DNA of 64,000 bases, from positions 186,001 to 250,000 of IMG/VR virus record IMGVR_UViG_3300050014_000823; one strand, given 5' to 3'. The first letter of the stretch is position 1; every line of letters starts with the position of its first letter. A program made the position numbers and the translations under genes. The notes under the pieces were generated by a model. That model saw only the letters and a list, made by a program, of their open reading frames with translations. It did not search any database and was not told the origin of the DNA. Positions 49,886-64,000 of the stretch are shown here, one piece after another.

Positions 49886-50332
49886 TTATTCGAAAATTAT
49901 TGGGTTTTTCTGACCGAATTCTCTTAATAAAACACCTGCAAGAGCATTTGCTTCGTTTTCATGCTCACTACCCGTTTCATTTGAACCATCTTTCAAAACA
50001 CCCGCTTTACGTTGTTTATCGTGTACTAATTCATGTGCAAGCGTCCTTAAAACGTCTGCTAAATTCCTATTTGTTGCCACCACTCGCAATTCATTTGTCT
50101 TTGGTGTGTACTTACCGAAGGAATGCATTGTTGGTGCTTCAGTTTCATCATACGAAATCACTATGTCTGGCATACTTTCACCCAAACCAAGTTTATTCTT
50201 AGCAAACTCAACGAACTGATTAATAACCTCTTCCTTCTTCTCCTTTGGGAGAATCGACTCGTTGAGATTATTAACTCTTCTCATCATTTCAAAGAGTCGT
50301 TGTGGACTGCCGTATGCATGAAATACTCTCAC
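49886..50332 (-). CDS. Zincin-like metallopeptidase-domain protein
   Basis: TLAHELVH (HExxH) plus downstream E.EANA; N-terminus shared with 47175-49874. Confidence 0.7.
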   Translation of the reverse strand: MRVFHAYGSPQRLFEMMRRVNNLNESILPKEKKEEVINQFVEFAKNKLGLGESMPDIVISYDETEAPTMHSFGKYTPKTNELRVVATNRNLADVLRTLAHELVHDKQRKAGVLKDGSNETGSEHENEANALAGVLLREFGQKNPIIFE

Positions 50333-51405: not shown

Positions 51406-52185
51406 TTATTTTAAATCTTGTAGTGTATAGCCACCAATTCCACCAGTTTTACACCTATTTAATGGTATCCAACCCTCAGAAACATATTTATTTAATGTTT
51501 CACGTTCTAATTTAATCGCATTTTCAACTGAAACATATTCAGTTAATTGTTTTCTTATTGGTACTAAACCTGTCATTTTCATGTGAATTGTGACACTATC
51601 CCTTTCATCAGAATTTCTAATGTATTGTCTTTTAACTATATTATATGTTAATCCAACATATACGTGATTGTCTGAAAACTCATATGCGTATATACATCTT
51701 TTATATTTACTACCCACAGGAATCATGTGTTGACAAATATCATCAAGCCAACCACTTTTCAACGAAATAGTATATACGTGTGGTGAGAATTTACAAAATT
51801 CGGTTTTTGTCTTATATTCCAATGCTCTATTTCGGCAATTTTCAACATTATTCCAATGTCCATTCGGCAATTTTTTAAATTTCATATGCCGACAAACATT
51901 TTCAAGCCACCCATTGTGTTTTGCTGATTCATATGCTTTTTTATCTCCTTGTTGAAATTCTATTCTATGTTGATATTTTAACGCAACAGTGCGACATTTT
52001 TCCTCAGTCCACTTAAATGTATCTTCATACGGCTTTTTCATGTGTTTACATGCAATATCAAGCTGTCCACCTTTTCTCAATATTTCGTATGCTCTCGAAG
52101 ATATTTCTCTGAAATCACGTCTATTCGAAAATTTAAGTGCTTCGTCAAAACACATTTTTTCAGTCCACTTATTGTATTTTTTCAT
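51406..52185 (-). CDS. GIY-YIG-like homing endonuclease with three N-terminal repeats (paralog of 8213-9109)
   Basis: CIYAYEFSDNHVYVGLTYN; W...C...ALKY....F......AY......GWL...C.HM repeats. Confidence 0.8.
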   Translation of the reverse strand: MKKYNKWTEKMCFDEALKFSNRRDFREISSRAYEILRKGGQLDIACKHMKKPYEDTFKWTEEKCRTVALKYQHRIEFQQGDKKAYESAKHNGWLENVCRHMKFKKLPNGHWNNVENCRNRALEYKTKTEFCKFSPHVYTISLKSGWLDDICQHMIPVGSKYKRCIYAYEFSDNHVYVGLTYNIVKRQYIRNSDERDSVTIHMKMTGLVPIRKQLTEYVSVENAIKLERETLNKYVSEGWIPLNRCKTGGIGGYTLQDLK

Positions 52186-52239: not shown

Positions 52240-52881
52240 TTATAATATTGTAACTAAATATCTTTTAAGTAAAGTAAAATTAGGGAGAATTTTATAATAT
52301 GTCAGGTACGTATCACCGCTTAAATCTTCGTGAGATTTAATTGCCCTATTACATAAACCCAATTTTATTTCATCTATACTAATCCGAAAAAAACCATACA
52401 TATTGAGATTCACACCCCAAATACATTTTTGTTTTGAAATGGCTGTTCCTAACACATATAACATTTCGTCTTTGTAATTATAAAGCATGTCTATTTCTTT
52501 CGGCAAAACATCCATTAAACCCTGTACATCAACGATTTGAAAGAATATTGGGTCTAAATTTACGTATAGGTATTTTGGACTGAAATAAAATTGTGGTACG
52601 GCTGCGATAAAACTTTCAATGCCTCTGACGTGCGATTGTTTGCTTTCTTCGAAGCTGCATTCCCAATAAAGTTCATTGCTAACTATGCGTTTTTTCAGAA
52701 TATCCGCATTCTGAATTATCTGATTGTTGGGGTTTGAAGCCTTCATGAACGACCATCCAACGTATAGTGTAGGAAGTTTGTCGAGACTGTCATACTCTTG
52801 TGGTCCTTTATAGTAGTTAATATAACTGACTTCGGTATGATTTACCAGTTCTTTTTCATAAATAATGTTACCTATTTTCAT
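52240..52881 (-). CDS. Hypothetical protein
   Basis: 213-aa ORF coupled to the hldD-like gene. Confidence 0.7.
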   Translation of the reverse strand: MKIGNIIYEKELVNHTEVSYINYYKGPQEYDSLDKLPTLYVGWSFMKASNPNNQIIQNADILKKRIVSNELYWECSFEESKQSHVRGIESFIAAVPQFYFSPKYLYVNLDPIFFQIVDVQGLMDVLPKEIDMLYNYKDEMLYVLGTAISKQKCIWGVNLNMYGFFRISIDEIKLGLCNRAIKSHEDLSGDTYLTYYKILPNFTLLKRYLVTIL

Positions 52882-53785
52882 TTTTTAGCTTATTTACGTA
52901 TTTCAAAACACCATCTTCTAACTCATGAAAAGGCTTTTTATAGCCAGCAACCCTCAACTTATTCATCTTAGCCTCAGTAAAATACTGATACTTGTCTCTG
53001 ATTTTAATTGGGGTGTCAATATAATTAATAGTTCCGGGATTACCAAGACTTTTAAAAACTGCTTTCGCCAAGTCATTAAAAGTACGTGCTTTTCCTGTTC
53101 CGACATTATAAATACCCGAAAGTGGTTTTTCTGTTGCCATAAATATGCAAACGTCAACAATATCATCCACATATACAAAATCACGTAGCTGTTCACCGTC
53201 TTTGTAGTCTGGACGATGTGACTTAAATAATTGAATTTTTGCAGGACCTGAACAAAACTCAATTTGGTGATATAAATGTAAAACAACAGAAGCCATTTTA
53301 CCTTTATCGGCTTCTCCGTAGCCGTAAACATTAAAAAATTTTAGTCCGTACCAATAAGGTGGTTGTTTTTCCTGGACTTCTGCCCAAACATCGAACTGTT
53401 GCTTTGACCAACCGTAGGGATTAAGTGGTTGTAACTTAATGATATCCTTCTCGTCATTAAAACCTAATTCTCCGTCACCATAGGTTGCTGCACTTGAAGC
53501 ATAAACCAAAGGGATTTGGTATTCTGCGCAGATATTCCAGATAAATATACTTGCGCCAACATTATATTCGTCAAAAAGATTTCTGTCCATAACAGTAGTA
53601 TCGGTAATAGCACCTAAGTGATAAATAACATCTATATCTTTGGCGTGAATTAAAAGCCATTCATATATCGACTGCAGACTTTCGGTACGGGTATCAAGTA
53701 CCACAACACCAATTGCTCCACGTCTTTGCAATTCTGCAACGAGATTCTGACCAATAAAACCTAAACCACCTGTTACTACTATCAT
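52868..53785 (-). CDS. hldD: ADP-L-glycero-D-manno-heptose 6-epimerase
   Basis: MIVVTGGLGFIG, HLGAITDTT, YASSAATYG, PLNPYGWSK, FFNVYG..E..KGKMASV, QLRDFVYVDD, KYQYFTEA. Confidence 0.92.
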   Translation of the reverse strand: MIVVTGGLGFIGQNLVAELQRRGAIGVVVLDTRTESLQSIYEWLLIHAKDIDVIYHLGAITDTTVMDRNLFDEYNVGASIFIWNICAEYQIPLVYASSAATYGDGELGFNDEKDIIKLQPLNPYGWSKQQFDVWAEVQEKQPPYWYGLKFFNVYGYGEADKGKMASVVLHLYHQIEFCSGPAKIQLFKSHRPDYKDGEQLRDFVYVDDIVDVCIFMATEKPLSGIYNVGTGKARTFNDLAKAVFKSLGNPGTINYIDTPIKIRDKYQYFTEAKMNKLRVAGYKKPFHELEDGVLKYVNKLKNENR

Positions 53786-54210
53786 AAATTTTTTATTTTC
53801 TCAATAATATTTGTGCTTGACCTTTTATCTGTTGGGTAAAAAACCACACCAAACCTTGAATTTTCACTGCCGATTACCTCTTTATTTCTATATTGGTCAC
53901 CAACAACCATATAATCAATATCTAACTTATCGACTAAGTTTCTCAACTCATCATCTGTGTCAAAGATAAATACTTGATGAACCATTCGCAAATTTCGCAT
54001 TATTGTTATTCTTGTGTTAATGTCATTAATGGGTCGTTTATCACCCTTTAACCTCTTAACACGCTCATCTGTATCAAGTCCAACATATAGCTTATTTTCC
54101 GCATCGAGAACTGGATATACATCACCGGGTTGATAGTTCTTTGCATACCAAAGTAAGTCTATGTGTCCCGTATGTAAGATGTCAAAGCACCCGTTTACCC
54201 AGATATTCAT
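53782..54210 (-). CDS. D-glycero-beta-D-manno-heptose 1-phosphate adenylyltransferase (RfaE domain II / HldC-like)
   Basis: NGCFDILHTGH, VGLDTD..V.RLKG..RPIN, SSTNII. Confidence 0.85.
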   Translation of the reverse strand: MNIWVNGCFDILHTGHIDLLWYAKNYQPGDVYPVLDAENKLYVGLDTDERVKRLKGDKRPINDINTRITIMRNLRMVHQVFIFDTDDELRNLVDKLDIDYMVVGDQYRNKEVIGSENSRFGVVFYPTDKRSSTNIIEKIKNL

Positions 54211-54494
54211 ATTTCTTCGATTCTTTTAGTTTTGTCATCAATAAGTAGGTCGTATGAGGGTTTAGTTTGGGTGTCAAGTCTGTGAAATTTACAACCCCAA
54301 TCAGCAAGTTGTTTCGCTGTTAATTCTTTCCAATCTATACCAGTATTTCCACCCCTGGCGGTCCAATAGGTAATTGAATGTCCTTCGTCAAAGAGTTTGT
54401 TGATTTTCTCAATCATATCATATCTTGGCTTGGCATTTGGATATCCCTCACTACTGTCACAGATTGTTCCGTCTATGTCTACTAAAATTTTCAT
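54207..54494 (-). CDS. Small HAD-superfamily phosphatase
   Basis: DIDGTI, TARG, KP..D..IDDK. Confidence 0.8.
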   Translation of the reverse strand: MKILVDIDGTICDSSEGYPNAKPRYDMIEKINKLFDEGHSITYWTARGGNTGIDWKELTAKQLADWGCKFHRLDTQTKPSYDLLIDDKTKRIEEI

Positions 54495-55642
54495 TGCTGG
54501 CTATCTCCTTTCTCTATTCTTATTGAATCTTCCGGAAAATCGGTTGTTGACACTTCAACTATAATCGAATTTGTAATCGCCATTAACTGATGTTCTACGT
54601 TTTGTTTAATTTCTATTTTGTCTCCTCTTTTAAAAAGAAAATAATCGAAAAAATCACCGTTTTCACTATTCATAACACATTCCAAACTACCCCACATACA
54701 AAACCACAATTCTTGTTTGAGAATATGTTTATGCCAACTAAATTTTTTTCCTTTGAAAAATACTAAATATTTTAAACAATATTTTTCGTTATTTACTAAG
54801 TGAATTTCCAACCCCCACCCCTTCTTAACTACCTTCGAGTTCGAATTTAATCCAATAAAAACTTGTGTCCAGAATTCTCGATTGAAATTTGTAATATTAT
54901 GACACTTTTTACATAATGTAATTAAATTATCTTCACCATTATTTTTTTTATTATAATCAACGTGATGTACATGTAAGTCTTCGGTTTCGCCACACAATTG
55001 ACAACAATTACCGTCCCTCTCTTTTATTCTGTCTTTTAATCCTTTATTAAATCCTCTCGCATATTTATGGTCTAACCTAACATTATCTTCAATTTCTTTA
55101 TTATTTCCATTATTTCTGGAACAATTTAGTGAACAAAATACCACATTCTGTCCCTTATGTAAATTTCTCCTTGTGTATTCAAAAACTTTACCACATCTTT
55201 TACACGTAGCCTTTTCTTTATCTTCAATCCACGCAGGATTATTTTCATTTAGTCTTTGTTGACTCAAGTACACGCTTAGACATTCTCTTGAACACACAAT
55301 TCTTTCGCCATAATGCTTAAATTCATTACCACAAACCTCACAATTACTCGTTGTTCTTATATCGGTCTTTGGTCTTACTGAATCTAACTGACATGTTTTT
55401 GAACAATATTGTCTGTCCTTCTCCCAAGTTGGTGCATTAAATTCTTTCTGACATTGTTTACAAACCAATGTTGATTTACGATTTTCATCAGTTTGTTTTT
55501 TATTTCGATTTCGCTTACACTCATAACAAATATCACTTTTAACATATCTCTTATCGACATGTCCATATTTACAAGGTTCACCAGTAAAGTACCACTTCTG
55601 ACCGATTTCTTTAGCTTCTTCCCTTGTAATTATCTCAATCAT
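54491..55642 (-). CDS. Zinc-finger/HNH endonuclease fused in frame to a C-terminal cupin (sugar isomerase-like)
   Basis: YFTG.PCK.GH, CxxC repeats, RDG..CQLCG...HVHH.DY...NN...NLITLC..CH, then KKGWG.E....N.KYC.K.L....KFS.H.H..K.E...H...EVST. Confidence 0.8.
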   Translation of the reverse strand: MIEIITREEAKEIGQKWYFTGEPCKYGHVDKRYVKSDICYECKRNRNKKQTDENRKSTLVCKQCQKEFNAPTWEKDRQYCSKTCQLDSVRPKTDIRTTSNCEVCGNEFKHYGERIVCSRECLSVYLSQQRLNENNPAWIEDKEKATCKRCGKVFEYTRRNLHKGQNVVFCSLNCSRNNGNNKEIEDNVRLDHKYARGFNKGLKDRIKERDGNCCQLCGETEDLHVHHVDYNKKNNGEDNLITLCKKCHNITNFNREFWTQVFIGLNSNSKVVKKGWGLEIHLVNNEKYCLKYLVFFKGKKFSWHKHILKQELWFCMWGSLECVMNSENGDFFDYFLFKRGDKIEIKQNVEHQLMAITNSIIVEVSTTDFPEDSIRIEKGDSQQ

Positions 55643-56427
55643 AATTTTGCTTTATTTAAATCCACAACAACCACACCCTTTTGAGTAACAACCCAAGCTG
55701 CGCACTTGTTTGCAAACTGAATTGCTTTGGAAATATCTTTATTTTTCATATAATCTGCAACCAAAGCCGCAAGGAAAGTATCTCCTGCACCACTTAAATC
55801 TCTGACTGGGTGTTCATCGTCTTCATTTAAAATCTCTTGATAATCAAAAATACCTACTTTATTGTGTGAATACATTGCCCCCTTTTTACCGAGAGTTACA
55901 ACTAATATATTACTGTATTGAAAGTCCAACCATTGTTTATTTTTCAGAAATTCTTTTTCGTTTATTTTAACACAAAAAACCTTATCACACCAATGACCAA
56001 AATCTTTCTTCGTGTCCATAAAAACCAACGGATGTGAATTTGCAATGTGTTCTATTACTTCCTCACTAATAAAACCCTTATCATAGTCACTAATAACAAT
56101 TGCTTCGTATTGACTATAATCAAACGCCATTTGCCTATCATATATGTTTGGTCCAACAAATATCATGTCGTTTTCATCAACCCGAAGTAACATCTGATTT
56201 GAAACTTCATCAACATATCGGGTTTTTGTTATGCCACTATATGTGTGGATATCTGCATCAATACCTAATGCAAGTAAGTTTGCATAGACATTCACAGCCA
56301 TACCACCATTAGACTTATCACCCAAAGGTTTAAAAACGGGTACTGGTGCTTCAGGACTTAACCTGTCGCATTTTCCATAGCGAAACACATCTTTACAACC
56401 GTCACCGATTACTAATACTTTACTCAC
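55639..56427 (-). CDS. Heptose-7-phosphate kinase (RfaE domain I / HldA-like, PfkB family)
   Basis: RLSPEAPVPV, GG.A.NV, SDYDKG, DLSGAGDTF. Confidence 0.88.
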   Translation of the reverse strand: MSKVLVIGDGCKDVFRYGKCDRLSPEAPVPVFKPLGDKSNGGMAVNVYANLLALGIDADIHTYSGITKTRYVDEVSNQMLLRVDENDMIFVGPNIYDRQMAFDYSQYEAIVISDYDKGFISEEVIEHIANSHPLVFMDTKKDFGHWCDKVFCVKINEKEFLKNKQWLDFQYSNILVVTLGKKGAMYSHNKVGIFDYQEILNEDDEHPVRDLSGAGDTFLAALVADYMKNKDISKAIQFANKCAAWVVTQKGVVVVDLNKAKL

Positions 56428-57455
56428 TGTAATCTCTTTAAAATCTCAATTATTTTTTCCGCAGCGTGACCATCACCAAATGGGCACTCTACATTTATTT
56501 CATAATCATTATGTACTTCGTCAAAAAAGTACTTTAAGTCTTCTGGTCTTGTTACCAAAAGACCATTTACACCAATTGCTTCCGGACGTTCTGTAACAAT
56601 TCGGCAAGTTAAACATATTTTATTGAAAAAACAAGATTCTTCCTGAAGTCCACCACTATCAGTTATTACCATACGACACTGAACCAGTAATTCAAGCATA
56701 TCCTCATATGGCAATGGGTCAATAACTACAACATTTTTTAATAAATGCTTCCATTTCTGCACATTTGGATTTGGATGCATTGGTAATATGAAAGCATATT
56801 GTGGATATTCCGTTGCAAGTTTTTCCAACTCAGTAAACCATCTGTCCATCCAATGATGATTTTCACGCCTATGTAATGTAACCAAAATTTTGTTGGTATA
56901 TATGCATTTATCTTTATATAACAAGAGATTATCAATGACCGTATTACCAACAACATAAACATCATCCAAAATTTTTTCTCCCGCAAGATTTCTTGCTGCC
57001 CAATCAGTTGGACATAGGTGAATATCTGCAATTTGTGATATTATTCTCCTGTTGACTTCTTCGGGATATGGGTTTTCTTTGTCGTATGTTCGGAGTCCGG
57101 CTTCCAGGTGTATTACTTTAATACCATGATGAAATGCAGACAGTGCTACCGCAAATGCCGATGTGGTATCGCCTTGGACCATTACATATGCATCAACGAA
57201 TTTACCTGTTTCTGTGTTGAGTTTACAGAAAGACCGAAAAAATTCCCACAACTGTCCTGTTATCGAACTAACAATCGAATCCAGTCTGTTGGGTTTATTC
57301 TCGATATTAAGAATCCAATCATATTCGAATTCTCCTATGTGAACCTGTTGTCCAGTGAATAGTATGTTAAACTCAAAATTATTCTTCCTTAATTCATCGA
57401 TAATCGGCTTAAGTTTAATGTATTCTGGTCGTGTGCCGTATGCTAATAATATCAT
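56424..57455 (-). CDS. wecB: UDP-N-acetylglucosamine 2-epimerase (non-hydrolysing)
   Basis: GTRPEYIK, QGDTT, HLEAGLRT, PEE.NR, TLHRREN, TDSGGLQEE, TERPE, FGDG. Confidence 0.92.
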   Translation of the reverse strand: MILLAYGTRPEYIKLKPIIDELRKNNFEFNILFTGQQVHIGEFEYDWILNIENKPNRLDSIVSSITGQLWEFFRSFCKLNTETGKFVDAYVMVQGDTTSAFAVALSAFHHGIKVIHLEAGLRTYDKENPYPEEVNRRIISQIADIHLCPTDWAARNLAGEKILDDVYVVGNTVIDNLLLYKDKCIYTNKILVTLHRRENHHWMDRWFTELEKLATEYPQYAFILPMHPNPNVQKWKHLLKNVVVIDPLPYEDMLELLVQCRMVITDSGGLQEESCFFNKICLTCRIVTERPEAIGVNGLLVTRPEDLKYFFDEVHNDYEINVECPFGDGHAAEKIIEILKRLQ

Positions 57456-58219
57456 TGTAAATCTTTTAATACTTCAGGTAATTCTTCGTTAAACTCAACT
57501 GCCTTACACCAAGCAGGTGGATTAACAGGATGCATATTAACCATGTCTGGTGTCCATTTAAGCCATATATTATTAAACCACGCATCTACATCAAAATCAT
57601 TATGATGACCCCAAGTTTTTAACTTTTCTCTGAGTTCACTATCGGTTAATACGTATGATGCATGATAACAAATGGCATTTGGAATATTAATGGTTGATAT
57701 CCCCGTAGGTTTTCTTTTTCTTTCGAACCTATTTCCTCTGTTTAGGTTAATAAATATTTGGGGGTGACCAACAATTTGACTGCCTAAATTAGCTACTGTT
57801 ATATGTTTAAATGATTTCCAGAAACTTATCCACCCACAAGTATAAATGTCGTAGCCGGGATGATTAACAATAAACATTTTCATCTGCTCAAAGCCATCGT
57901 GAAAATAAAATTCGTCTGCATCATGAATCATAAGATAGTCAATACCATCTTCTTTGGCTCTGTCAACACATGCATTCCTTTGTGCTTCTTCGGTAAGCCA
58001 ATCACCTAAAATCAAGACAATTTTATCAGCAAATCTCGATTCTCTTATTATTTTCAAGTCAAAAGAATTTACATATTCTTGTCTTGCGGTGGGGTTATAT
58101 CCCCAAGGCTTATCGCTATATGCAATATAAATTTTATCTACATGTGGATATGCATTTTCAATATTTCTCATAATCCACTTGTCTTGACCGAACAATACTA
58201 TGTGTGTTGCAAATTTCAT
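57452..58219 (-). CDS. GT-A (GT2-like) glycosyltransferase
   Basis: QRNAC...DADEF (DxD) motif. Confidence 0.7.
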   Translation of the reverse strand: MKFATHIVLFGQDKWIMRNIENAYPHVDKIYIAYSDKPWGYNPTARQEYVNSFDLKIIRESRFADKIVLILGDWLTEEAQRNACVDRAKEDGIDYLMIHDADEFYFHDGFEQMKMFIVNHPGYDIYTCGWISFWKSFKHITVANLGSQIVGHPQIFINLNRGNRFERKRKPTGISTINIPNAICYHASYVLTDSELREKLKTWGHHNDFDVDAWFNNIWLKWTPDMVNMHPVNPPAWCKAVEFNEELPEVLKDLQ

Positions 58220-58842
58220 TTCTTTTTAGCTATTAAACATCCACAATCGGTTACAGAATCTTTAAATCCCTGAAAACCATCAAACATATGTTTCATTTCA
58301 TCCCACGCACGCCAAACCCCGCATTGGTCTGGTTTACTTCTTTGCCAATAATCGTGCGTCCAAACATAATATTTATTTTGCATGTTATATTTAAGTATTA
58401 ACTCAATTTCTTTTCTTACGTGCTCTTCTGTGTGGTCACCATCCTGTATAATTAAATCGAAATCAAATGGTTCTGACAATATTTTCAGCGAATCGTCAAG
58501 AACACGTTTAAAATTATTTGAATGTAACTTGTCATATTCAAGTCTTTCTTGAATGTCAAGCAATGTGACTTCACCGCAACCATTCATTTCAACCGCCTGC
58601 AATATGTGATTAGAACTTCTACCAAGAAAATTACCGATTTCCAATATTCTTTTTGGCTTTAAAATGCGCATCAACACAAATATTGACTTGCCCTCACTTT
58701 CCCATATGCTTCCTGCAGGTTCTTCGGGATAGCCACCATATAACGACTCATCATAATAACCACAAAAATCCGTAAGATTAACTCCCGTTAGTTTTTCAAA
58801 CCCAATAAAATACGTCTTTATAAAGTCTTCCCTTTTATCCAT
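58216..58842 (-). CDS. Class I SAM-dependent methyltransferase (Methyltransf_24-like)
   Basis: KPKRILEIGNFLGRSS, FDLIIQDGDH, HD. Confidence 0.8.
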   Translation of the reverse strand: MDKREDFIKTYFIGFEKLTGVNLTDFCGYYDESLYGGYPEEPAGSIWESEGKSIFVLMRILKPKRILEIGNFLGRSSNHILQAVEMNGCGEVTLLDIQERLEYDKLHSNNFKRVLDDSLKILSEPFDFDLIIQDGDHTEEHVRKEIELILKYNMQNKYYVWTHDYWQRSKPDQCGVWRAWDEMKHMFDGFQGFKDSVTDCGCLIAKKK

Positions 58843-59398
58843 TTTTTTCAAACATAAAAAATTTTGCTGAAGTCAATAAAAAATTATCAACCTCTTCTAT
58901 TAATTTAAAATCTTTACGATTCTCTTCCACCCAATCAGTAAACTTGCGATGAATGACATGTGGTGCACTACTATCGTAGCTATTAAAATTTGACGAAAAT
59001 ATTAACACGTATTTCTTTGACCCATCAAACAATCTGGTCAAATATTTTTCATATTCCTCTTGAGAAAGAATGTGATATACTACGTCTAAGGATATACACA
59101 AATCTGCTTGGGGCAAATCCGACATTAATGAACAAAAATTCATGGCTTTATTGTTCTTAAACTTTTCGTGGCATAAATAAAGTGCATATGAAGATATGTC
59201 ATAACCCATATAACTATCAAAACCCTTTAACAGACTAATTTGATTACCATCACCACACCCAAAGTCCGATATTGTTTTAATTCCGAACTTCGTGATATAA
59301 TTATTAATCACAGTCGCTTTATGGTCGGCAGTTTCGCCATACGACCCATTACCCGAATTACCGCCTGCTCTATATCTCTCTTCCCAATAATTATTCAT
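58835..59398 (-). CDS. Class I SAM-dependent methyltransferase
   Basis: YWEERY..GGNSG.GS, DFGCGDG, GYDIS, SLDVVYH. Confidence 0.85.
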   Translation of the reverse strand: MNNYWEERYRAGGNSGNGSYGETADHKATVINNYITKFGIKTISDFGCGDGNQISLLKGFDSYMGYDISSYALYLCHEKFKNNKAMNFCSLMSDLPQADLCISLDVVYHILSQEEYEKYLTRLFDGSKKYVLIFSSNFNSYDSSAPHVIHRKFTDWVEENRKDFKLIEEVDNFLLTSAKFFMFEKNG

Positions 59399-59408
59399 AA
59401 TTAATTTA

Positions 59409-60062
59409 TTAATCGCTCCACCCTCTTAAACCTGCGTTTAGATGAATATACCCAACTTGTGGTGGCATTTCAACATTATATAGCATAGATTCACTGTGTA
59501 CATATTTAATTATATTTGATTTTAAGTTTGTTGTTGCAATTTTTTTATAAAACCAAAGTTCGGGACAAATACTACCATTTTTATATTTGTCAATTTCCGA
59601 TTCACTTTTTAATAGCGAAATTTTAGTAAACAATGCTTCAACCGCCCTTCTATTCATAAATATCACTTCCATCATTGCATATTCATTGCCATACCACACG
59701 GGGTTTCTATATACTAAATCACATTTATTTTCGAAAACACTTGTTATATGGTTCATAACAACATCAATAGACTTTGGATTTATTCTGACATCATCGTGTG
59801 AAAAAATTAAAACATCGAAATCTGTTTCCAATGACATATTACATGACAACATCAGTCCATTAACACATCCAATTTTATGTTGGGGTGTTTCCATGTAATA
59901 TTTAATACTTAGGTTATTTTCTTGACTAAAAAACTCATCATTTTTATAACTATTACACGCAATAAACTCTTGTGCGTCAGGAAAAAAACTTCTTTCAATA
60001 TTTATTGTTTCCTTTAACGTTTTAAATCTATTATAAACATTATGTGCAAAAACTATTTTCAT
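59409..60062 (-). CDS. Putative GT-A glycosyltransferase
   Basis: N-terminal .YNR..L, FSHDDV; located in the glycan operon. Confidence 0.55.
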   Translation of the reverse strand: MKIVFAHNVYNRFKTLKETINIERSFFPDAQEFIACNSYKNDEFFSQENNLSIKYYMETPQHKIGCVNGLMLSCNMSLETDFDVLIFSHDDVRINPKSIDVVMNHITSVFENKCDLVYRNPVWYGNEYAMMEVIFMNRRAVEALFTKISLLKSESEIDKYKNGSICPELWFYKKIATTNLKSNIIKYVHSESMLYNVEMPPQVGYIHLNAGLRGWSD

Positions 60063-60071
60063 CTTACTAAT

Positions 60072-60800
60072 TTACCATATACAAACTTTATTTAATGTGT
60101 CAGCACCACGCAAATACCCTCTTGTTGGACCAAGACTCATCATTGAATCTAATGTCGAACCTGCGTCCAGATAAGTGTTGTTGGGGGAAGACTTAAAACA
60201 TTCCATGATTAGAATGTTCGAAAACGGACCTGCACAGAAGAGAAACAAATGATTTTCAATTTTTTTCTCTTCGATATATTTTTTCATCTTACCAACCAAC
60301 TCAAAATCTTGCATCCACGCATTAGTACCAACGTAAAACGTCTGTACTATTTTACCTGCAAAGGGCAAGTGATTAATAACTGCCTTGTTGTTTACTACCA
60401 TAACAACATTATAATTGTTAAACTCAGGAATTATTGTTTTCACATAGTTGGGATAGTTTGCATTGACAAATATATTACCCCATGTCAGATGCTCATCGTC
60501 CTGTCCTGTTAGTGCTTTTAATTTTTCGTGTTTCTCGTTACCAACACAACATCTACATGCAATTCCAACATAATAATTGTCTGCCTTGTATTGTGCAGAT
60601 TCAAGTAATTTTTCCCTGAAGTATCCGTGGTCTGGTTGATTTGGGTCATAAATAAACTCACCGTTTAATTTTTGCCTTAAGTCAATGAATTCGTTGAAAA
60701 GAATAATCATTTCACCGTCATTGTTTCTTGAAACAGCAAAAGGTATGTGATTTTTTATCTTTTCTTGAAACTTTATAAAATCTCCACCAAATGTTTTCAT
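60072..60800 (-). CDS. GT-D fold (DUF1792-like) glycosyltransferase-like protein
   Basis: SRNNDGE (R.xDGE), LFCAGP, LDAGS. Confidence 0.6.
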   Translation of the reverse strand: MKTFGGDFIKFQEKIKNHIPFAVSRNNDGEMIILFNEFIDLRQKLNGEFIYDPNQPDHGYFREKLLESAQYKADNYYVGIACRCCVGNEKHEKLKALTGQDDEHLTWGNIFVNANYPNYVKTIIPEFNNYNVVMVVNNKAVINHLPFAGKIVQTFYVGTNAWMQDFELVGKMKKYIEEKKIENHLFLFCAGPFSNILIMECFKSSPNNTYLDAGSTLDSMMSLGPTRGYLRGADTLNKVCIW

Positions 60801-60801
60801 A

Positions 60802-61536
60802 TCATTTAATATTATTTACAGTTTTCCAACCATTATTTATACAATGTACACAAATCTCACCACGTAAATCCAGGTGATTTCCAATTCTCCATGAAGCATT
60901 TGCATCACTGCCAACCTCATTACCTGTTCGAAAATCCGAACTCCAGAGATTCTGATTATTATCTGGATGTGGTGGAACAAATGTATTAATGTTGCCGTAC
61001 TTTTGTGCTAAGTAAGAAAATGTAATATCTTCACCATTATCCCAAGAATATGGCTTTTCATACCACATATATTTTGCCCATTCTTGTCTAAAAAACCAAG
61101 CATGTCCAACTAAATCAACACGTTCAACTTTATTGGAGTGTCCACCATTCCAACCGAACTTATGATGAGGATAATACCCTTTACAGTCAACAATTACACC
61201 ACTACCACCAAGTATACCGTTGCTTTCAGGTTTTTCAATTGTTTCTACACAATTTTTAAACCAGTCCTTCTGTGGAAGTATATCATCATCAAACATTGCA
61301 ACGAACTTTGTTTTAAGCATTGGTAGTATGGAAAATCTACCCCAAAATTTAGTGTTCCAGTTACATGCATATGTTCGTATATCTTTATCAACAGGAAAAT
61401 ATTGTGCAACATCTGTTTTATTGTACCAAACATGAATGTTTTCGCTTTTAATTTCAACTGACTGTGCCTTTACTGCTTGAATTTGTCTTTCGAGCATATA
61501 GGGTCTTTTATATACATTTAATACAACACTAATCAT
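60802..61536 (-). CDS. GT2-like glycosyltransferase
   Basis: ISVVLNVYKRP, FDDD, GEDI. Confidence 0.75.
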   Translation of the reverse strand: MISVVLNVYKRPYMLERQIQAVKAQSVEIKSENIHVWYNKTDVAQYFPVDKDIRTYACNWNTKFWGRFSILPMLKTKFVAMFDDDILPQKDWFKNCVETIEKPESNGILGGSGVIVDCKGYYPHHKFGWNGGHSNKVERVDLVGHAWFFRQEWAKYMWYEKPYSWDNGEDITFSYLAQKYGNINTFVPPHPDNNQNLWSSDFRTGNEVGSDANASWRIGNHLDLRGEICVHCINNGWKTVNNIK

Positions 61537-62510
61537 AATTTTTCAATATATTTTTGAGTATAAACACCGCCACCCCTTCTTGAGTCTGCATGAAGTTGTG
61601 AATCATCATTGCCGTCATGATAAACCATAGAATATTGTGTTCTGAAAATCCAACAACTCATTTCTTTAATTGCATCGTTTATTTGATTCCACGCACGCAC
61701 AGGTGTTCCTGGTTTACTCACCGCAACAGCATCAACGGGTTTCATCTTATATTCCATGTGTTTAATAACAGCATCGTCTATTAGTGCAATTCCATCCACA
61801 AAATCTTTTCTCTGCCACCATTGTTCGTGCTCAGTTATTTTTTTAAATGACCATAAATGTGGTGCAATTGCCATAATTCTGCCATTTTCTGCCTTTTTAC
61901 TAAAAAACATATCCACAACCGCATCCAAGAATCCTTTAGAAAGTATAAAATCGTCATCCATCTGTAAAACAACATGACAAGTAATATTCTTTAAAAATTC
62001 CCACATCTGATTATAACAATACCAGTGCAACACCTTTCCGTTGGGGGTTTTATTTTCAATGTATGTAAGATTTGAAAACTCATTTATTAAACTACCATAT
62101 CTCGTATCAGTTGAACCGTCATTGAGAAGTATTATTTTTATTGTATATTTTGTTGGTTGCTCGTGAAATTGTTGTATTAATCTCCGAACCTTTTCATATC
62201 TATTGTGTGACGGTATGCAAATAACTACGTCATAATCAACAAATGCTTTTTTTTCATATATTCTAAAGCCACTTGCGCCATTTTCAGCACGTAAAGCAGT
62301 ACGTTCAGAATTATTTAATCGACTCACATCAATATATGTGTTCTGTTTATCTTGTAAATAGACATCAGCACGTTTTCTATTTCTAATTTCATCCAAATCA
62401 TCCATTGCTTTATTTCCTCTTTTATCGAGAAATAATAATTTCTGATTTCGTAATTCGATTTTCTTCTCGATTAACCTCTTTCTCGAAATTTTTTGCCTTT
62501 TCATTACCAA
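61533..62510 (-). CDS. GT2-like glycosyltransferase with a basic N-terminal extension
   Basis: ICIPSHNR, LNDGSTD, QMDDDF. Confidence 0.75.
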   Translation of the reverse strand: MVMKRQKISRKRLIEKKIELRNQKLLFLDKRGNKAMDDLDEIRNRKRADVYLQDKQNTYIDVSRLNNSERTALRAENGASGFRIYEKKAFVDYDVVICIPSHNRYEKVRRLIQQFHEQPTKYTIKIILLNDGSTDTRYGSLINEFSNLTYIENKTPNGKVLHWYCYNQMWEFLKNITCHVVLQMDDDFILSKGFLDAVVDMFFSKKAENGRIMAIAPHLWSFKKITEHEQWWQRKDFVDGIALIDDAVIKHMEYKMKPVDAVAVSKPGTPVRAWNQINDAIKEMSCWIFRTQYSMVYHDGNDDSQLHADSRRGGGVYTQKYIEKL

Positions 62511-64000
62511 CTTTCAGCTATAACTTCCTCATATAGTGTAAATACTTTATTGGCAGAAAAGTCCGAGTGATATTTTTCCAAGTCCTGTGGAACTTCCTGT
62601 AATTCCTTATTTTGAATGTTTCCTTGGTCATCCACAACATATATCCAACCTGGTTTTCCACATAAAAATCCCTCAATGGTTGTTCTGCCTTTAAAAATTC
62701 CTGCAGTATAGTCACACTTCTTAATGTATTCTTCGACATTCTGCTTAACCCCAAGATATTTCACATGGTCGCCAACGAGAATATTAGCATACCCGCCATT
62801 ATCCGCACCGATTATCTGTAATAATTGACCATTCGTTCTGGTCATTTCAACTAAGTCGAGTAAAATGTTTTTTCTTAAATGGTCAAGTGTACCAATAAAC
62901 AGTACAATCTCTTTGGGATTCTTAACAGGCGTATAGTTTGTATTAAACCTCTTAGTATCGAATGGATTGTCAATTGTGACAATCTTATCAGCCTCAATAC
63001 CGTAAGACCTAATATAATCGGTGATGCTATCACGAATACTTATGTATCTCGCAATTCTTGGATTGATAATTGGTTCTTCGAAGGTAGGTATGACTTCGCT
63101 TCTGACATGCATAACTGCAGGAGTATTCGGGTATAAGCCTAACATAAGTTCCCCGATAGGTTTGTGGTTAATGTGAATGATATCGAATTCCTGCTCATTT
63201 TTAATAAAATGAAATTTACCGTCTTGGTCCAGTACATAATTGGGTAAATTTATGTAACTGCAAACTCTTACACCATTTGCAAGTGCTTTCTTGTGTAATG
63301 GTTCGCCAACAACTTGAGAAATTATAGTAACATCACAACCCTGTTTAACAAGTTCCTTTGAAAGTTCGTAATTTGACATTTCAGAACCCGTGTAGTTTTT
63401 AAAGAACTGACAGCAGAGCAGTACTTTTAATCTACCCTCAGAAACATGACGAATAGGTAAATTATATTCACTGGCGAACTTTATCCTATTTCTGTCCCAA
63501 TCTGGATTAGTTTGACCCATTGACTTGTGTAATACTCTTATTGAGGCGGTTACACCAATATTAACATCTTTCAGATAGTTATCTACACAAAATGGTAAGT
63601 CATAAAAGTGAAATAAACCATAATTCTCGTTGAAATTTTTAACTATTTGGTCGGGGTCAACACCCATGAATAAACCATCAATAATTATAACTGGTTTTAC
63701 TCCGTTGAATTGTGGTGAATACTCACTTACCCATGTACTCATGCCGTTTGTGTGTTCAACAATACCATACATTTTGCTTCTGTCTTCCCACCACATGCCA
63801 GATGCCGGGAGAAATGTTGTCCCCGCAAGTCCAATAATTGCGTAGTCGGTATGATTAAATTGGTTTAACAATACTTTTCCCCAGTTTTTTGTCTTATATA
63901 CCATGTCGTTATGACAAAAAACAAACACACAATCTTTTTCTGCGTGGGTTTTTAGTGCATCGTTATAAATCTGTGGCAAACCAAACTGTCCAAAGTTCGG
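62504..64000 (-). CDS. Bifunctional glycosyltransferase (GT-A N-terminal plus GT4-like C-terminal); 5'-truncated by the window end
   Basis: FCHND..IGLAG..IDG..FHFYD, then GSEM..YELSKEL..G.DV, NPFD, GRTTIEG; frame open to 64000. Confidence 0.8.
   Translation of the reverse strand, partial: PNFGQFGLPQIYNDALKTHAEKDCVFVFCHNDMVYKTKNWGKVLLNQFNHTDYAIIGLAGTTFLPASGMWWEDRSKMYGIVEHTNGMSTWVSEYSPQFNGVKPVIIIDGLFMGVDPDQIVKNFNENYGLFHFYDLPFCVDNYLKDVNIGVTASIRVLHKSMGQTNPDWDRNRIKFASEYNLPIRHVSEGRLKVLLCCQFFKNYTGSEMSNYELSKELVKQGCDVTIISQVVGEPLHKKALANGVRVCSYINLPNYVLDQDGKFHFIKNEQEFDIIHINHKPIGELMLGLYPNTPAVMHVRSEVIPTFEEPIINPRIARYISIRDSITDYIRSYGIEADKIVTIDNPFDTKRFNTNYTPVKNPKEIVLFIGTLDHLRKNILLDLVEMTRTNGQLLQIIGADNGGYANILVGDHVKYLGVKQNVEEYIKKCDYTAGIFKGRTTIEGFLCGKPGWIYVVDDQGNIQNKELQEVPQDLEKYHSDFSANKVFTLYEEVIAESW

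What the first reader, a model, noticed from the sequence alone, without database searches (positions are those of the whole stretch)
52868..64000. Phage-encoded ADP-heptose pathway and glycan-building operon
Split HldA-like kinase and HldC-like adenylyltransferase, HldD epimerase and a small HAD phosphatase (possible GmhB stand-in) are translationally coupled with WecB, about six glycosyltransferase genes (GT-A, GT4, GT-D-like) and two methyltransferases. No GmhA (SIS domain) is visible in the window; the cupin fused to the HNH gene sits in the middle of the heptose genes and is a candidate replacement isomerase (inference). Many Bacteroidota LPS lack heptose, which would explain why the phage brings its own donor pathway.
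Basis: partly seen in the sequence, partly recalled or inferred. Interest (0 to 1): 0.62.

Follow-up and report, generated by a model that had tools for sequence, protein, structure and literature searches.

The report
Phage ADP-heptose cassette lacking GmhA
A 299-kb T4-like phage from peat carries a tightly packed operon for making the sugar donor ADP-heptose and building a glycan, in which the usual first enzyme (GmhA) is missing and a small cupin protein, so far mislabelled in phage databases, most likely does its job.

Summary
On the minus strand of 52240-64000 (running 114 bases past the window end) lie 16 tightly packed, mostly 4-base-overlapping genes. They include WecB, an HldA-like kinase, an HNH-cupin fusion, a 95-aa HAD phosphatase, an HldC-like nucleotidyltransferase and HldD. 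There are also three clear glycosyltransferases (one more marginal, not six) and two methyltransferases.

No SIS/GmhA gene exists anywhere in the 299-kb genome.

The cassette itself is not new. The same five families sit together in cultured cyanomyophages (P-SSM2 PSSM2_309-313, S-SM2, S-CAM3, P-TIM68, S-SSM7). There the HAD is mislabelled "phosphoheptose isomerase" and the cupin "cysteine dioxygenase". None of those five complete genomes has a SIS gene either.

The cupin-as-isomerase idea is strengthened by several results:
- The cupin is standalone and syntenic in most relatives.
- Elsewhere it occurs fused to the HAD or to the HldC-type domain, next to HldE.
- Its invariant residues match seven of eight active-site residues of D-lyxose/D-mannose isomerase.

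Enzymology is still missing, and the acceptor of the glycan is unknown. No membrane export proteins are encoded, so I favour virion proteins. The Bacteroidota host is only weakly supported.

The parts
62504..64000 (-). Two-domain glycosyltransferase (536 aa; its first 38 codons lie beyond the window end, at L001:505-2115:-)
   Evidence: Pfam Glyco_tranf_2_5 at 1e-18 plus Glyco_transf_4 at 1.5e-11.
61533..62510 (-). GT2-family glycosyltransferase (325 aa)
   Evidence: Pfam Glycos_transf_2 at 9e-10, above cut-off.
60802..61536 (-). GT2-family glycosyltransferase (244 aa)
   Evidence: Pfam Glycos_transf_2 at 1.6e-7, above cut-off. 70-71% identical copies in L005 and L012.
60072..60800 (-). Unknown protein u242
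   Evidence: No hit in Pfam, NCBIfam or PHROGs. Present in some relatives only.
59409..60062 (-). Unknown protein u217
   Evidence: No family hit.
58835..59398 (-). SAM-dependent methyltransferase (187 aa)
   Evidence: Pfam Methyltransf_11 above cut-off. phrog_3382. Weak similarity to the pseudaminic-acid-associated methylase family.
58216..58851 (-). SAM-dependent methyltransferase (about 208-211 aa)
   Evidence: Pfam Methyltransf_24 at 2.9e-9, above cut-off.
57452..58219 (-). Unknown protein u255, possibly a divergent GT-A glycosyltransferase
   Evidence: Only sub-threshold GT2 hits (E=0.024).
56424..57455 (-). WecB, non-hydrolysing UDP-GlcNAc 2-epimerase (makes UDP-ManNAc)
   Evidence: TIGR00236 at 257 bits, above the 210 cut-off. 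Pfam Epimerase_2 at 3e-73.
55639..56427 (-). HldA-like heptose-7-phosphate 1-kinase (PfkB, 262 aa, GTG start)
   Evidence: Best NCBIfam hit is rfaE_dom_I at 2.7e-35, below the equivalog cut-off. Best PDB hit is HldA 4e84, with the N-terminal signature conserved. phrog_8133 at 245 bits.
54851..55642 (-). HNH homing-endonuclease module with zinc ribbons, fused in frame to the cupin
   Evidence: Pfam HNH. phrog_1271 and other HNH families. Absent from 7 of the 10 loci. No start codon lies between it and the cupin.
54494..54850 (-). Cupin domain (119 aa), the proposed metal-dependent sedoheptulose-7-P isomerase replacing GmhA
   Evidence: phrog_7851 at 1e-31. Weak PF01050/Cupin_2 hits. AF2 model with pLDDT 88.6. 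Closest by sequence and rmsd to D-lyxose/D-mannose isomerase 7nzo. Synteny and fusions.
54207..54494 (-). Minimal capless HAD phosphatase (95 aa), the proposed stand-in for GmhB
   Evidence: Motifs DxDGT, T, K and DD seen in the translation. phrog_1238 at 8e-29. PDB 9iqw 'capsule biosynthesis protein' at 3e-13. Weak hits to BT0820 and EcbF/BcbF.
53782..54210 (-). HldC-like heptose-1-phosphate adenylyltransferase (142 aa)
   Evidence: Best NCBIfam hit is rfaE_dom_II at 4.8e-26, below cut-off. phrog_7878.
52868..53785 (-). HldD, ADP-glycero-manno-heptose 6-epimerase (305 aa)
   Evidence: TIGR02197 at 329.8 bits, above the 274.6 cut-off. PDB 1eq2 at 8e-48 over the full length, with the YxxxK and K-containing loop conserved.
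52240..52881 (-). u213, a clade-wide core gene of unknown function that overlaps the end of hldD by 14 bases
   Evidence: Over 500 clusters at 60-79% identity, always just after the epimerase where context was read. Folding failed.

Best explanation
The region is the donor-synthesis core plus tailoring genes of a phage glycan locus.

Donor pathway (five co-translated enzymes, all functions inferred from homology and context):
1. The cupin, here fused to an HNH endonuclease, isomerises the ketose phosphate to D-glycero-D-manno-heptose-7-P. It would work as a metal-dependent aldose-ketose isomerase, as D-lyxose/mannose isomerases and cupin-type PMI/PGI do. This takes the place of the SIS enzyme GmhA.
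2. The HldA-like PfkB kinase phosphorylates O-1.
3. The 95-aa HAD removes the 7-phosphate, taking the place of GmhB.
4. The HldC-like transferase adds AMP.
5. HldD epimerises C-6.
Together they would convert sedoheptulose-7-phosphate into ADP-L-glycero-beta-D-manno-heptose without host help.

Glycan assembly: WecB supplies UDP-ManNAc. At least three soluble glycosyltransferases and two methyltransferases then assemble a methylated heteroglycan.

Acceptor (least certain step): the phage encodes no flippase, polymerase or ligase. The cassette is a conserved core next to a hypervariable tailoring block. I therefore favour a cytoplasmic acceptor, most likely virion proteins.
For: Shown by sequence and tools:
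- Enzyme identities.
- 4-base overlaps between genes.
- No SIS/GmhA in the 91%-complete genome, in five relatives' records, or in five complete cyanophage genomes with the same cassette.
- The order kinase-cupin-HAD-nucleotidyltransferase-epimerase is kept in nine of the ten related IMG/VR loci (L012 lacks the HAD) and in three further 355-372-kb contigs.
- The same five families sit together in Kyanoviridae: P-SSM2, S-CAM3, S-SM2, P-TIM68 and S-SSM7.
- Rosetta-stone fusions exist: HAD+cupin (P0014, P0056, P0049, P0066), cupin+HldC-type domain in both orders (P0146, P0153), and HAD-cupin beside bifunctional HldE in two unrelated contigs.
- Invariant K27, H40, H42, K45, E47, H87 and E99 of the cupins align with K62, H75, H77, K86, E88, H143 and E156. 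These are the metal and sugar-binding residues of Thermofilum D-lyxose isomerase (alignments; residue roles in PMC8378251).
- The model superposes on 7nzq at 1.4 A with 28% identity.
- No TM-rich protein is found in the cluster or in the genome.

Inferred: five enzymatic steps against five genes, with one unassigned gene and one unassigned step. Cyanobacterial LPS lacks heptose (PMC4390846), so those phages need a complete route of their own.
Against: - No enzymology exists for any of these proteins.
- The cupin fold is promiscuous. By Z-score the model is tied with the CapF cupin (an NDP-sugar 3-epimerase), KdgF and seed globulins.
- Pfam hits to PMI and lyxose-isomerase families are weak for the window's copy.
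- The kinase, the nucleotidyltransferase and the HAD score below NCBIfam equivalog cut-offs.
- The Shapirobacteria MAG that carries the HAD-cupin fusion also has a GmhA-like SIS gene in a separate GDP-heptose-type cluster, so the cupin is not always the only candidate isomerase.
- One relative (L012, 75% complete) lacks the HAD.
- No GT9 heptosyltransferase was found in this genome, so the enzyme that would use ADP-heptose is unidentified.
- The acceptor is pure inference.
Confidence: 0.55

Rival explanations
1. The phage relies on a host (or other) isomerase for heptose-7-phosphate. The cupin is a tailoring enzyme instead, for example a metal-dependent epimerase or isomerase acting on the nucleotide sugar, like the cupin domain of CapF.
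For: CapF cupin domains top the Z-ranking, at Z 15.4. One genome with a HAD-cupin fusion also has a GmhA-like gene elsewhere. Cupin homologues at about 40% identity also sit in non-heptose sugar clusters, e.g. the Pelagibacter MAG locus L018 with SDR and epimerase genes.
Against: Identity to CapF is only 12-13%, against 23-28% to D-lyxose isomerases, whose catalytic Lys/Glu and metal ligands are invariant in the phage family. Fusions are to the phosphatase and to the nucleotidyltransferase, i.e. to steps that act on sugar phosphates. The cassette occurs in phages of cyanobacteria, whose LPS lacks heptose. Six phage genomes lack any SIS gene.
Confidence: 0.25
2. The cassette makes a different ADP-sugar, for example ADP-mannose from fructose-6-P. 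The cupin would act as a phosphomannose isomerase, and the 'HldD' would act on another substrate.
For: The cupin's weak family hits are to the PMI type II C-terminal domain. The kinase and the nucleotidyltransferase are below equivalog cut-offs. Modules in L017 and L040 show no HldD on their short contigs.
Against: HldD scores above the curated equivalog cut-off and aligns end to end with 1eq2. The kinase keeps the HldA-specific N-terminal signature. The L017 partner scores 326 bits, full length, against HldE.
Confidence: 0.08
3. The glycan is added to the host envelope (LPS, O-antigen or capsule remodelling). It would block superinfection or competing phages, as proposed for cyanophage and pelagimyophage 'LPS genes', rather than being added to virions.
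For: This is the published interpretation for related gene sets (PMC7029224; PMC7378029). The hypervariable glycosyltransferase/methyltransferase block resembles O-antigen loci.
Against: No initiating phosphoglycosyltransferase, flippase, polymerase or ligase is found, and no protein with 5 or more TM-like segments exists in the whole genome. The donor cassette is a clade-wide core next to conserved genes, rather than an accessory moron. Host machinery could still be used, so this rival is not excluded.
Confidence: 0.3
4. The sugars decorate phage DNA (hypermodified bases).
For: Phage glycosyltransferases can hypermodify DNA with diverse glycans (bioRxiv 10.1101/2023.12.21.572611, listed). One cupin homologue (P0007) lies among nucleotide-metabolism genes.
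Against: The genome has no Tet/JBP dioxygenase. Its only thymidylate-synthase-family gene is a true ThyA (TIGR03284 at 271 bits), so no hydroxymethyl-pyrimidine route is visible. No T4-type DNA glucosyltransferase turned up in the Pfam, NCBIfam and PHROG scans of the cluster's proteins; the families themselves were not searched in the genome.
Confidence: 0.07

Closest known systems
Bacterial ADP-L-glycero-beta-D-manno-heptose pathway (GmhA, HldE or HldA+HldC, GmhB, HldD)
   Same: The kinase, nucleotidyltransferase and 6-epimerase are homologues of HldA, HldC and HldD. The split HldA/HldC form is as in Burkholderia. The step logic is the same.
   Different: There is no SIS isomerase. The phosphatase is a 95-aa capless HAD of the BT0820/EcbF-BcbF kind, not a GmhB/HisB-type HAD. 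A cupin occupies the fifth slot. No GT9 heptosyltransferase is present.
Cyanomyophage 'heptose/LPS' cassette, T4-GC 304-308 (e.g. P-SSM2 PSSM2_309-313; also S-SM2, S-CAM3, P-TIM68, S-SSM7)
   Same: The same five protein families are adjacent: phrog_7878, 8133, 1238, 7851 and 540. Identity is 37-49%. They lie beside tail-fibre, structural and glycan genes, and there is no SIS gene in the genome.
   Different: Gene order differs. Here the cassette is joined to WecB, more glycosyltransferases and methyltransferases, and the cupin carries an HNH module. The habitat is peat, not ocean. In RefSeq and PHROGs the HAD is named 'phosphoheptose isomerase' and the cupin 'cysteine dioxygenase'.
Cupin-type aldose-ketose isomerases: D-lyxose/D-mannose isomerase (7nzo, 2y0o), archaeal small PMI (7zvy, 7zvm), cupin-type PGI
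   Same: Single-domain cupin with His-His-Glu-His metal site. Lys and Glu are equivalent to the catalytic K86 and E88 of the Thermofilum enzyme. The chemistry produces the manno configuration at C-2, as GmhA does.
   Different: Only 23-28% identity. The phage family is shorter and has its own invariant C-terminal D-S-x-R motif. The substrate would be a seven-carbon sugar phosphate. Activity is untested.
Hypervariable tail-fibre/glycosyltransferase regions of pelagimyophages and cyanomyophages (PMC7029224)
   Same: T4-like phages carrying rfaE-like genes and several glycosyltransferases in a variable region.
   Different: In this clade the donor cassette is constant and only the tailoring block varies.
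Virus-encoded glycosylation of virions (chloroviruses, mimivirus fibrils, some mycobacteriophages; from my own knowledge, not tested here)
   Same: Soluble, virus-encoded nucleotide-sugar enzymes and glycosyltransferases, without membrane export machinery.
   Different: No heptose donor pathway is known to me in those systems. Virion glycosylation is not shown here.

Membership tests
Canonical ADP-heptose pathway | SIS-fold sedoheptulose-7-P isomerase GmhA | tested here: not met
   PF13580, TIGR00441 and PF01380 find nothing in the 299-kb genome, even at E<=1 for the last two. The control genomes do ring.
Canonical ADP-heptose pathway | PfkB-type heptose-7-P kinase (HldA / HldE domain I) | tested here: inconclusive
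   rfaE_dom_I is by far the best family (2.7e-35), but 122 bits is below the 345 cut-off. The protein is about 50 aa shorter than HldA. The N-terminal HldA signature is conserved against 4e84.
Canonical ADP-heptose pathway | GmhB-type HAD 7-phosphatase | tested here: not met
   The 95-aa HAD matches the BT0820, EcbF-BcbF and 9iqw type of phosphatase, not GmhB families. All four HAD motifs are present, so phosphatase chemistry is plausible.
Canonical ADP-heptose pathway | HldC / HldE domain II adenylyltransferase | tested here: inconclusive
   rfaE_dom_II is the best hit (4.8e-26, full length), but 91 bits is below the 181 cut-off.
Canonical ADP-heptose pathway | HldD ADP-heptose 6-epimerase | tested here: met
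   TIGR02197 at 329.8 bits, above the 274.6 cut-off. PDB 1eq2 at 8e-48.
Cupin aldose-ketose isomerases (D-lyxose isomerase / PMI type II) | Cupin barrel with His-His-Glu-His metal site | tested here: met
   Model with pLDDT 88.6, all-beta barrel. H40, H42, E47 and H87 are invariant in 14 sequences.
Cupin aldose-ketose isomerases (D-lyxose isomerase / PMI type II) | Catalytic and sugar-binding residues of D-lyxose isomerase (K62, K86, E88, E156, D163 in TsLI) | tested here: met
   K27, K45, E47 and E99 are invariant and aligned. D163 falls two residues from the invariant D108.
Cupin aldose-ketose isomerases (D-lyxose isomerase / PMI type II) | Score above the Pfam gathering cut-off for PF01050 or PF07385 | tested here: inconclusive
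   The window copy scores 18.9 bits, below 23.6. The relatives L004 and L007 pass PF07385 (24.3 and 22.5, above 20.8). P0009, P0060 and P0124 pass PF01050.
Cupin aldose-ketose isomerases (D-lyxose isomerase / PMI type II) | Isomerase activity on a sugar or sugar phosphate | not testable with these tools
   Needs an enzyme assay.
Cyanomyophage T4-GC 304-308 cassette | The five families (nucleotidyltransferase, kinase, mini-HAD, cupin, epimerase) co-located in a T4-like phage | tested here: met
   PHROG assignments. tblastn at 37-49% identity and annotated loci. The genome has T4-type Gp23, a baseplate protein and a RecA/UvsX-like gene.
Free-standing / fused HNH homing endonuclease | Intact HNH motif and presence/absence polymorphism among close relatives | tested here: met
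   Pfam HNH and several HNH PHROGs. The module is present in the window (L003 is the same sequence), L008, L009 and L048. It is absent in L004-L007, L010-L012, L049 and L050.

The most novel reading that the evidence does not exclude
A metal-dependent cupin is a previously unrecognised sedoheptulose-7-phosphate isomerase. Together with a 95-aa HAD phosphatase it forms a GmhA- and GmhB-independent route to ADP-heptose. This route is conserved from ocean cyanophages to peat huge phages and CPR-type bacteria. It lets lytic phages heptosylate their own particles in hosts that make no heptose. Part of what databases and virome surveys list as phage 'phosphoheptose isomerase (gmhA)' and 'cysteine dioxygenase' would then be mis-assigned.
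Probability: 0.45. Interest if true: 0.72.

Novelty: new variant of a known kind. Interest (0 to 1): 0.6.

Why it matters
ADP-heptose is a core building block of Gram-negative envelopes and a potent innate-immune signal. Its pathway has been regarded as fixed (GmhA, HldE, GmhB, HldD).

A non-homologous isomerase and phosphatase would be a clean case of non-orthologous displacement in that pathway. It would correct annotations carried by many marine and soil phage genomes. It would also explain why phages of hosts without heptose carry the genes.

The hypothesis is directly testable with standard E. coli mutants and with cultured cyanophages. It also points to a conserved donor cassette next to a hypervariable tailoring block, which would serve as a glycan-diversification system in a large clade of huge phages.

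Tried and rejected
- Folding u213 from an 8-sequence alignment gave pLDDT 46, which is unusable. The Atlas feature search for it gave nothing.
- The fold search in the 'atlas' library was unavailable.
- The VIA second look showed that fold alone cannot separate isomerase cupins from other cupins.
- A tblastn of one bacterial SIS domain against the phage collection hit only Listeria-labelled fragments. The query is probably too distant to be a fair test, so I draw no conclusion from it.
- Two phage-collection records with HldA-like genes (L046, probably bacterial HldE+HldD; L047, a lone kinase) gave no information on complementary distribution.
- No GT9 heptosyltransferase was found in this genome. 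Only a 'faint' GT9 hit appears in relative L049.
- A DNA-modification route was looked for and not found.
- Literature searches for a cupin heptose isomerase found nothing relevant.
- Host assignment could not be tested beyond capsid similarity.
- Read laying, complex prediction and alternative genetic codes were not used.

Full report
**Where the window lies.** The window is bases 186001-250000 of a 299,144-bp IMG/VR virus record that CheckV rates 91% complete. It is a T4-like myovirus. It has a Gp23-type major capsid protein, a T4 baseplate protein and PhoH, and a RecA/UvsX-like gene and a 5'-3' exonuclease just downstream of the finding. The DNA occurs in peat metagenomes. G+C is about 35%.

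**Observation.** All genes of the finding are on the minus strand. From upstream to downstream they are:
- a KilA-N gene outside the window;
- a 536-aa two-domain glycosyltransferase that starts 114 bases beyond the window end;
- two GT2 glycosyltransferases;
- two unknown proteins (u242, u217);
- two SAM methyltransferases;
- u255, with marginal GT2 similarity only;
- WecB, the HldA-like kinase, the HNH-cupin fusion, the 95-aa HAD, the HldC-like nucleotidyltransferase and HldD;
- u213.

From MT211 down to HldD every junction overlaps by 4 bases, and HldD and u213 overlap by 14. The 'translationally coupled operon' description is therefore accurate. Three are firm and one is marginal.

**The donor enzymes.**
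- HldD is the firmest. It is above the curated equivalog cut-off of TIGR02197 (329.8 against 274.6 bits). It aligns over its whole length with E. coli ADP-heptose 6-epimerase 1eq2, with the catalytic YxxxK and the lysine-bearing loop conserved.
- The kinase has rfaE domain I as by far its best family, and the heptose kinase HldA (4e84) as its best solved relative, including the HldA N-terminal signature. It is about 50 residues shorter and scores below the equivalog cut-off.
- The nucleotidyltransferase likewise has rfaE domain II as its best family, below cut-off.
- The 95-aa protein is not a fragment. It has all four HAD motifs and keeps its length in relatives. It belongs to phrog_1238. It resembles a 134-aa 'capsule biosynthesis protein' structure (9iqw, 3e-13) and the BT0820/EcbF-BcbF phosphatases, not GmhB.

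**No GmhA.** Three SIS/GmhA models find nothing in the whole genome, while the control genomes ring. Nothing is found in five partial relatives' records either.

**The cupin: anatomy.** Residues 265-383 of the 383-aa protein form a cupin. The first 264 residues are a zinc-ribbon-rich HNH endonuclease. No start codon lies between the two parts, so here the cupin can only be made as a fusion. In seven of the ten related IMG/VR loci the cupin is a free gene of 123-125 aa at the same place, between kinase and HAD; L005's copy is broken by a 1-base deletion. The fusion is found in the window (L003 is the same sequence), L008, L009 and L048. The HNH part is thus a secondary, mobile addition.

**The cupin: evidence for a role in the pathway.**
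1. Synteny. The order kinase-cupin-HAD-nucleotidyltransferase-epimerase-u213 is kept in nine of the ten IMG/VR loci; L012 lacks the HAD. It is also kept in three further huge contigs of 355-372 kb from other samples, where a SET-domain gene sometimes sits between HAD and nucleotidyltransferase.
2. A second phage lineage. The same five families lie together in cultured Kyanoviridae: P-SSM2 (PSSM2_309-313), S-CAM3, S-SM2, P-TIM68 and S-SSM7. 31 of the 35 phage records with the cupin also show the kinase. None of these five complete genomes has a SIS gene. Cyanobacterial LPS is reported to lack heptose (PMC4390846). In S-SM2 and P-TIM68 a transketolase-like gene stands directly upstream of the kinase; transketolase makes sedoheptulose-7-P.
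3. Gene fusions. A profile search of 1.8 billion representatives finds 2,613 relatives at E<=1e-10. Among the best 150 are HAD+cupin fusions, cupin+HldC-type and HldC-type+cupin fusions, and an NT5C-type HAD+cupin fusion. In a Candidatus Shapirobacteria MAG contig (L017) and in an unrelated metagenome contig (L040), a HAD-cupin fusion lies divergently next to a bifunctional HldE. The L017 HldE scores 326 bits over its full length.
4. Active site. Fourteen cupins share invariant K27, H40, H42, K45, E47, H87, E99, D108, S109 and R111. The printed alignments to Thermofilum D-lyxose isomerase 7nzo place K27, H40, H42, K45, E47, H87 and E99 on K62, H75, H77, K86, E88, H143 and E156. These are the Mn ligands, the proposed catalytic base E88, and the lysine that stabilises the enediol (PMC8378251). 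My mapping uses a chain offset of 24, which makes all eight residue types agree.
5. Structure. The AF2 model (pLDDT 88.6) has D-lyxose isomerase as its top Foldseek match. It superposes on the mannose complex 7nzq at 1.4 A with 28% identity.

D-lyxose/D-mannose isomerases and PMI set the same C-2 (manno) configuration that GmhA sets in heptose-7-P. Cupin-type PGI is an established precedent for a cupin replacing a classical sugar-phosphate isomerase; this last point is from my own knowledge and the reference list of PMC8378251.

**The cupin: caveats.**
- By Z-score the model is tied with many cupins, including the CapF 3-epimerase domain.
- The Pfam matches of the window copy are sub-threshold.
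- The Shapirobacteria MAG also has a GmhA-like SIS gene between HddA- and HddC-like genes on another contig.
- Homologues at about 40% identity occur in other sugar clusters.
- One relative's record (L012) lacks the HAD.
- No activity has been measured.

I put the isomerase role at roughly 55%.

**The glycan-building part and the acceptor.** The block upstream of the kinase differs in every relative examined:
- GT2s with a DegT aminotransferase and an acetyltransferase;
- a faint GT9 hit with a GT1 and six methyltransferases;
- a UDP-galactopyranose mutase with an epimerase, methyltransferases and WecB.

So a constant donor cassette is joined to a hypervariable tailoring block. None of the 20 proteins around the cluster has a TM-like segment. 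No ORF in the genome has more than four, so no Wzx, Wzy, ligase or membrane phosphoglycosyltransferase is encoded.

u213, u263, u148, the 899-aa DUF5661 protein with a variable middle, and the 477-aa protein are clade core genes. This pattern fits cytoplasmic glycosylation of phage proteins best. Use of host lipid-linked machinery cannot be excluded. That is the published reading for similar genes in marine myophages (PMC7029224; PMC7378029).

A DNA-glycosylation route finds no support. There is no Tet/JBP dioxygenase, and the only ThyA-family gene is a true thymidylate synthase. No GT9 heptosyltransferase is found here, so the heptose-using transferase is unidentified.

**Host.** The capsid protein's nearest cultured relatives are Flavobacterium phage immuto (33% identity) and Rhodothermus phage RM378 (27%), besides uncultured huge phages. 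This is weak support for a Bacteroidota-type host, and nothing more.

**Known or new.**
- A phage-borne heptose-type cassette with glycosyltransferases is known at the annotation level.
- I could not find anywhere the recognition that these cassettes lack GmhA and GmhB homologues.
- The gene labelled 'phosphoheptose isomerase' is a HAD phosphatase.
- The gene labelled 'cysteine dioxygenase' is the likely isomerase.

I therefore rate the operon as a new member of a known cassette. Relative to the textbook route, I rate the pathway as a new variant of a known kind.

**Housekeeping.** Only table 11 was used. No reads were laid. No step needed referral.

Noticed in passing
window 54851-55642 (minus strand); also P0016, P0019, P0024, P0029 and others: Homing-endonuclease modules are repeatedly fused in frame to the N-terminus of this cupin. 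34 of the best 150 cluster representatives carry the HNH/zinc-ribbon extension, some reduced to zinc ribbons only (about 200 aa). One (P0019) carries GIY-YIG+NUMOD3 instead. Full-length fusions stay 77% identical among the window, L008 and L009, which suggests both parts are kept.
   Followed up: partly
L041:4685-5029 (P-SSM2 PSSM2_311) and L041:5010-5366 (PSSM2_312); PHROGs 1238 and 7851: RefSeq and PHROG names look wrong. The 114-aa 'phosphoheptose isomerase' has HAD phosphatase motifs, and the 'cysteine dioxygenase' is the sugar-isomerase-like cupin. Virome surveys that count phage 'gmhA' from such labels may be counting the phosphatase.
   Followed up: partly
window 51406-52185 (minus strand): A GIY-YIG endonuclease gene lies just downstream of u213. 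It is present at that place in the window, L008, L010 and L011, and absent there in the other relatives, as expected of a free-standing homing endonuclease. Copies also occur elsewhere in L006 and L011.
   Followed up: partly
L043:1-264 (S-SM2 SSM2_198) and L044:1926-3071 (P-TIM68 gp190): A 'transketolase central region' gene sits directly upstream of the heptose kinase in two cyanophages. It might feed sedoheptulose-7-P into the cassette.
   Followed up: no
L049:8239-8625 and L050:8310-8684: A small SET-domain gene is inserted between the HAD and the nucleotidyltransferase in two huge-phage relatives.
   Followed up: no
L029 (G006 contig 61) versus L017: The same Candidatus Shapirobacteria MAG carries a GDP-heptose-type cluster (HddA-like kinase, GmhA-like SIS, HddC-like guanylyltransferase). 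It also carries, on another contig, the HldE + HAD-cupin module with a methyltransferase and a TauD-like dioxygenase.
   Followed up: partly
L005:8763-9183 versus L004:1340-1760: The cupin of L005 has a one-base deletion in a run of A, relative to the 95%-identical L004 copy. It is either an assembly error or a recent frameshift. Other differences are mostly at third codon positions.
   Followed up: partly
L012 (record of 246 kb, 75% complete): This relative has the cupin directly followed by the nucleotidyltransferase, and no HAD95 homologue anywhere in the record.
   Followed up: partly
window 47175-49874 (minus strand): The 899-aa protein with a DUF5661 match has conserved ends and a variable middle among relatives, with lengths from 720 to 1269 aa. 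This pattern is typical of a host-recognition or surface protein, and it is a conceivable glycosylation target.
   Followed up: no
window 49886-50332 (minus strand): The conserved 148-aa protein has only sub-threshold similarity to small metallopeptidase families (M78/IrrE-like, DUF3920).
   Followed up: no
contig of P0009 (256 kb): Another huge-phage lineage, with a TubZ-like tubulin and intein-containing ribonucleotide reductase, has a PfkB kinase directly followed by a zinc-ribbon-cupin and a glycosyltransferase. No nucleotidyltransferase or epimerase lies nearby.
   Followed up: no
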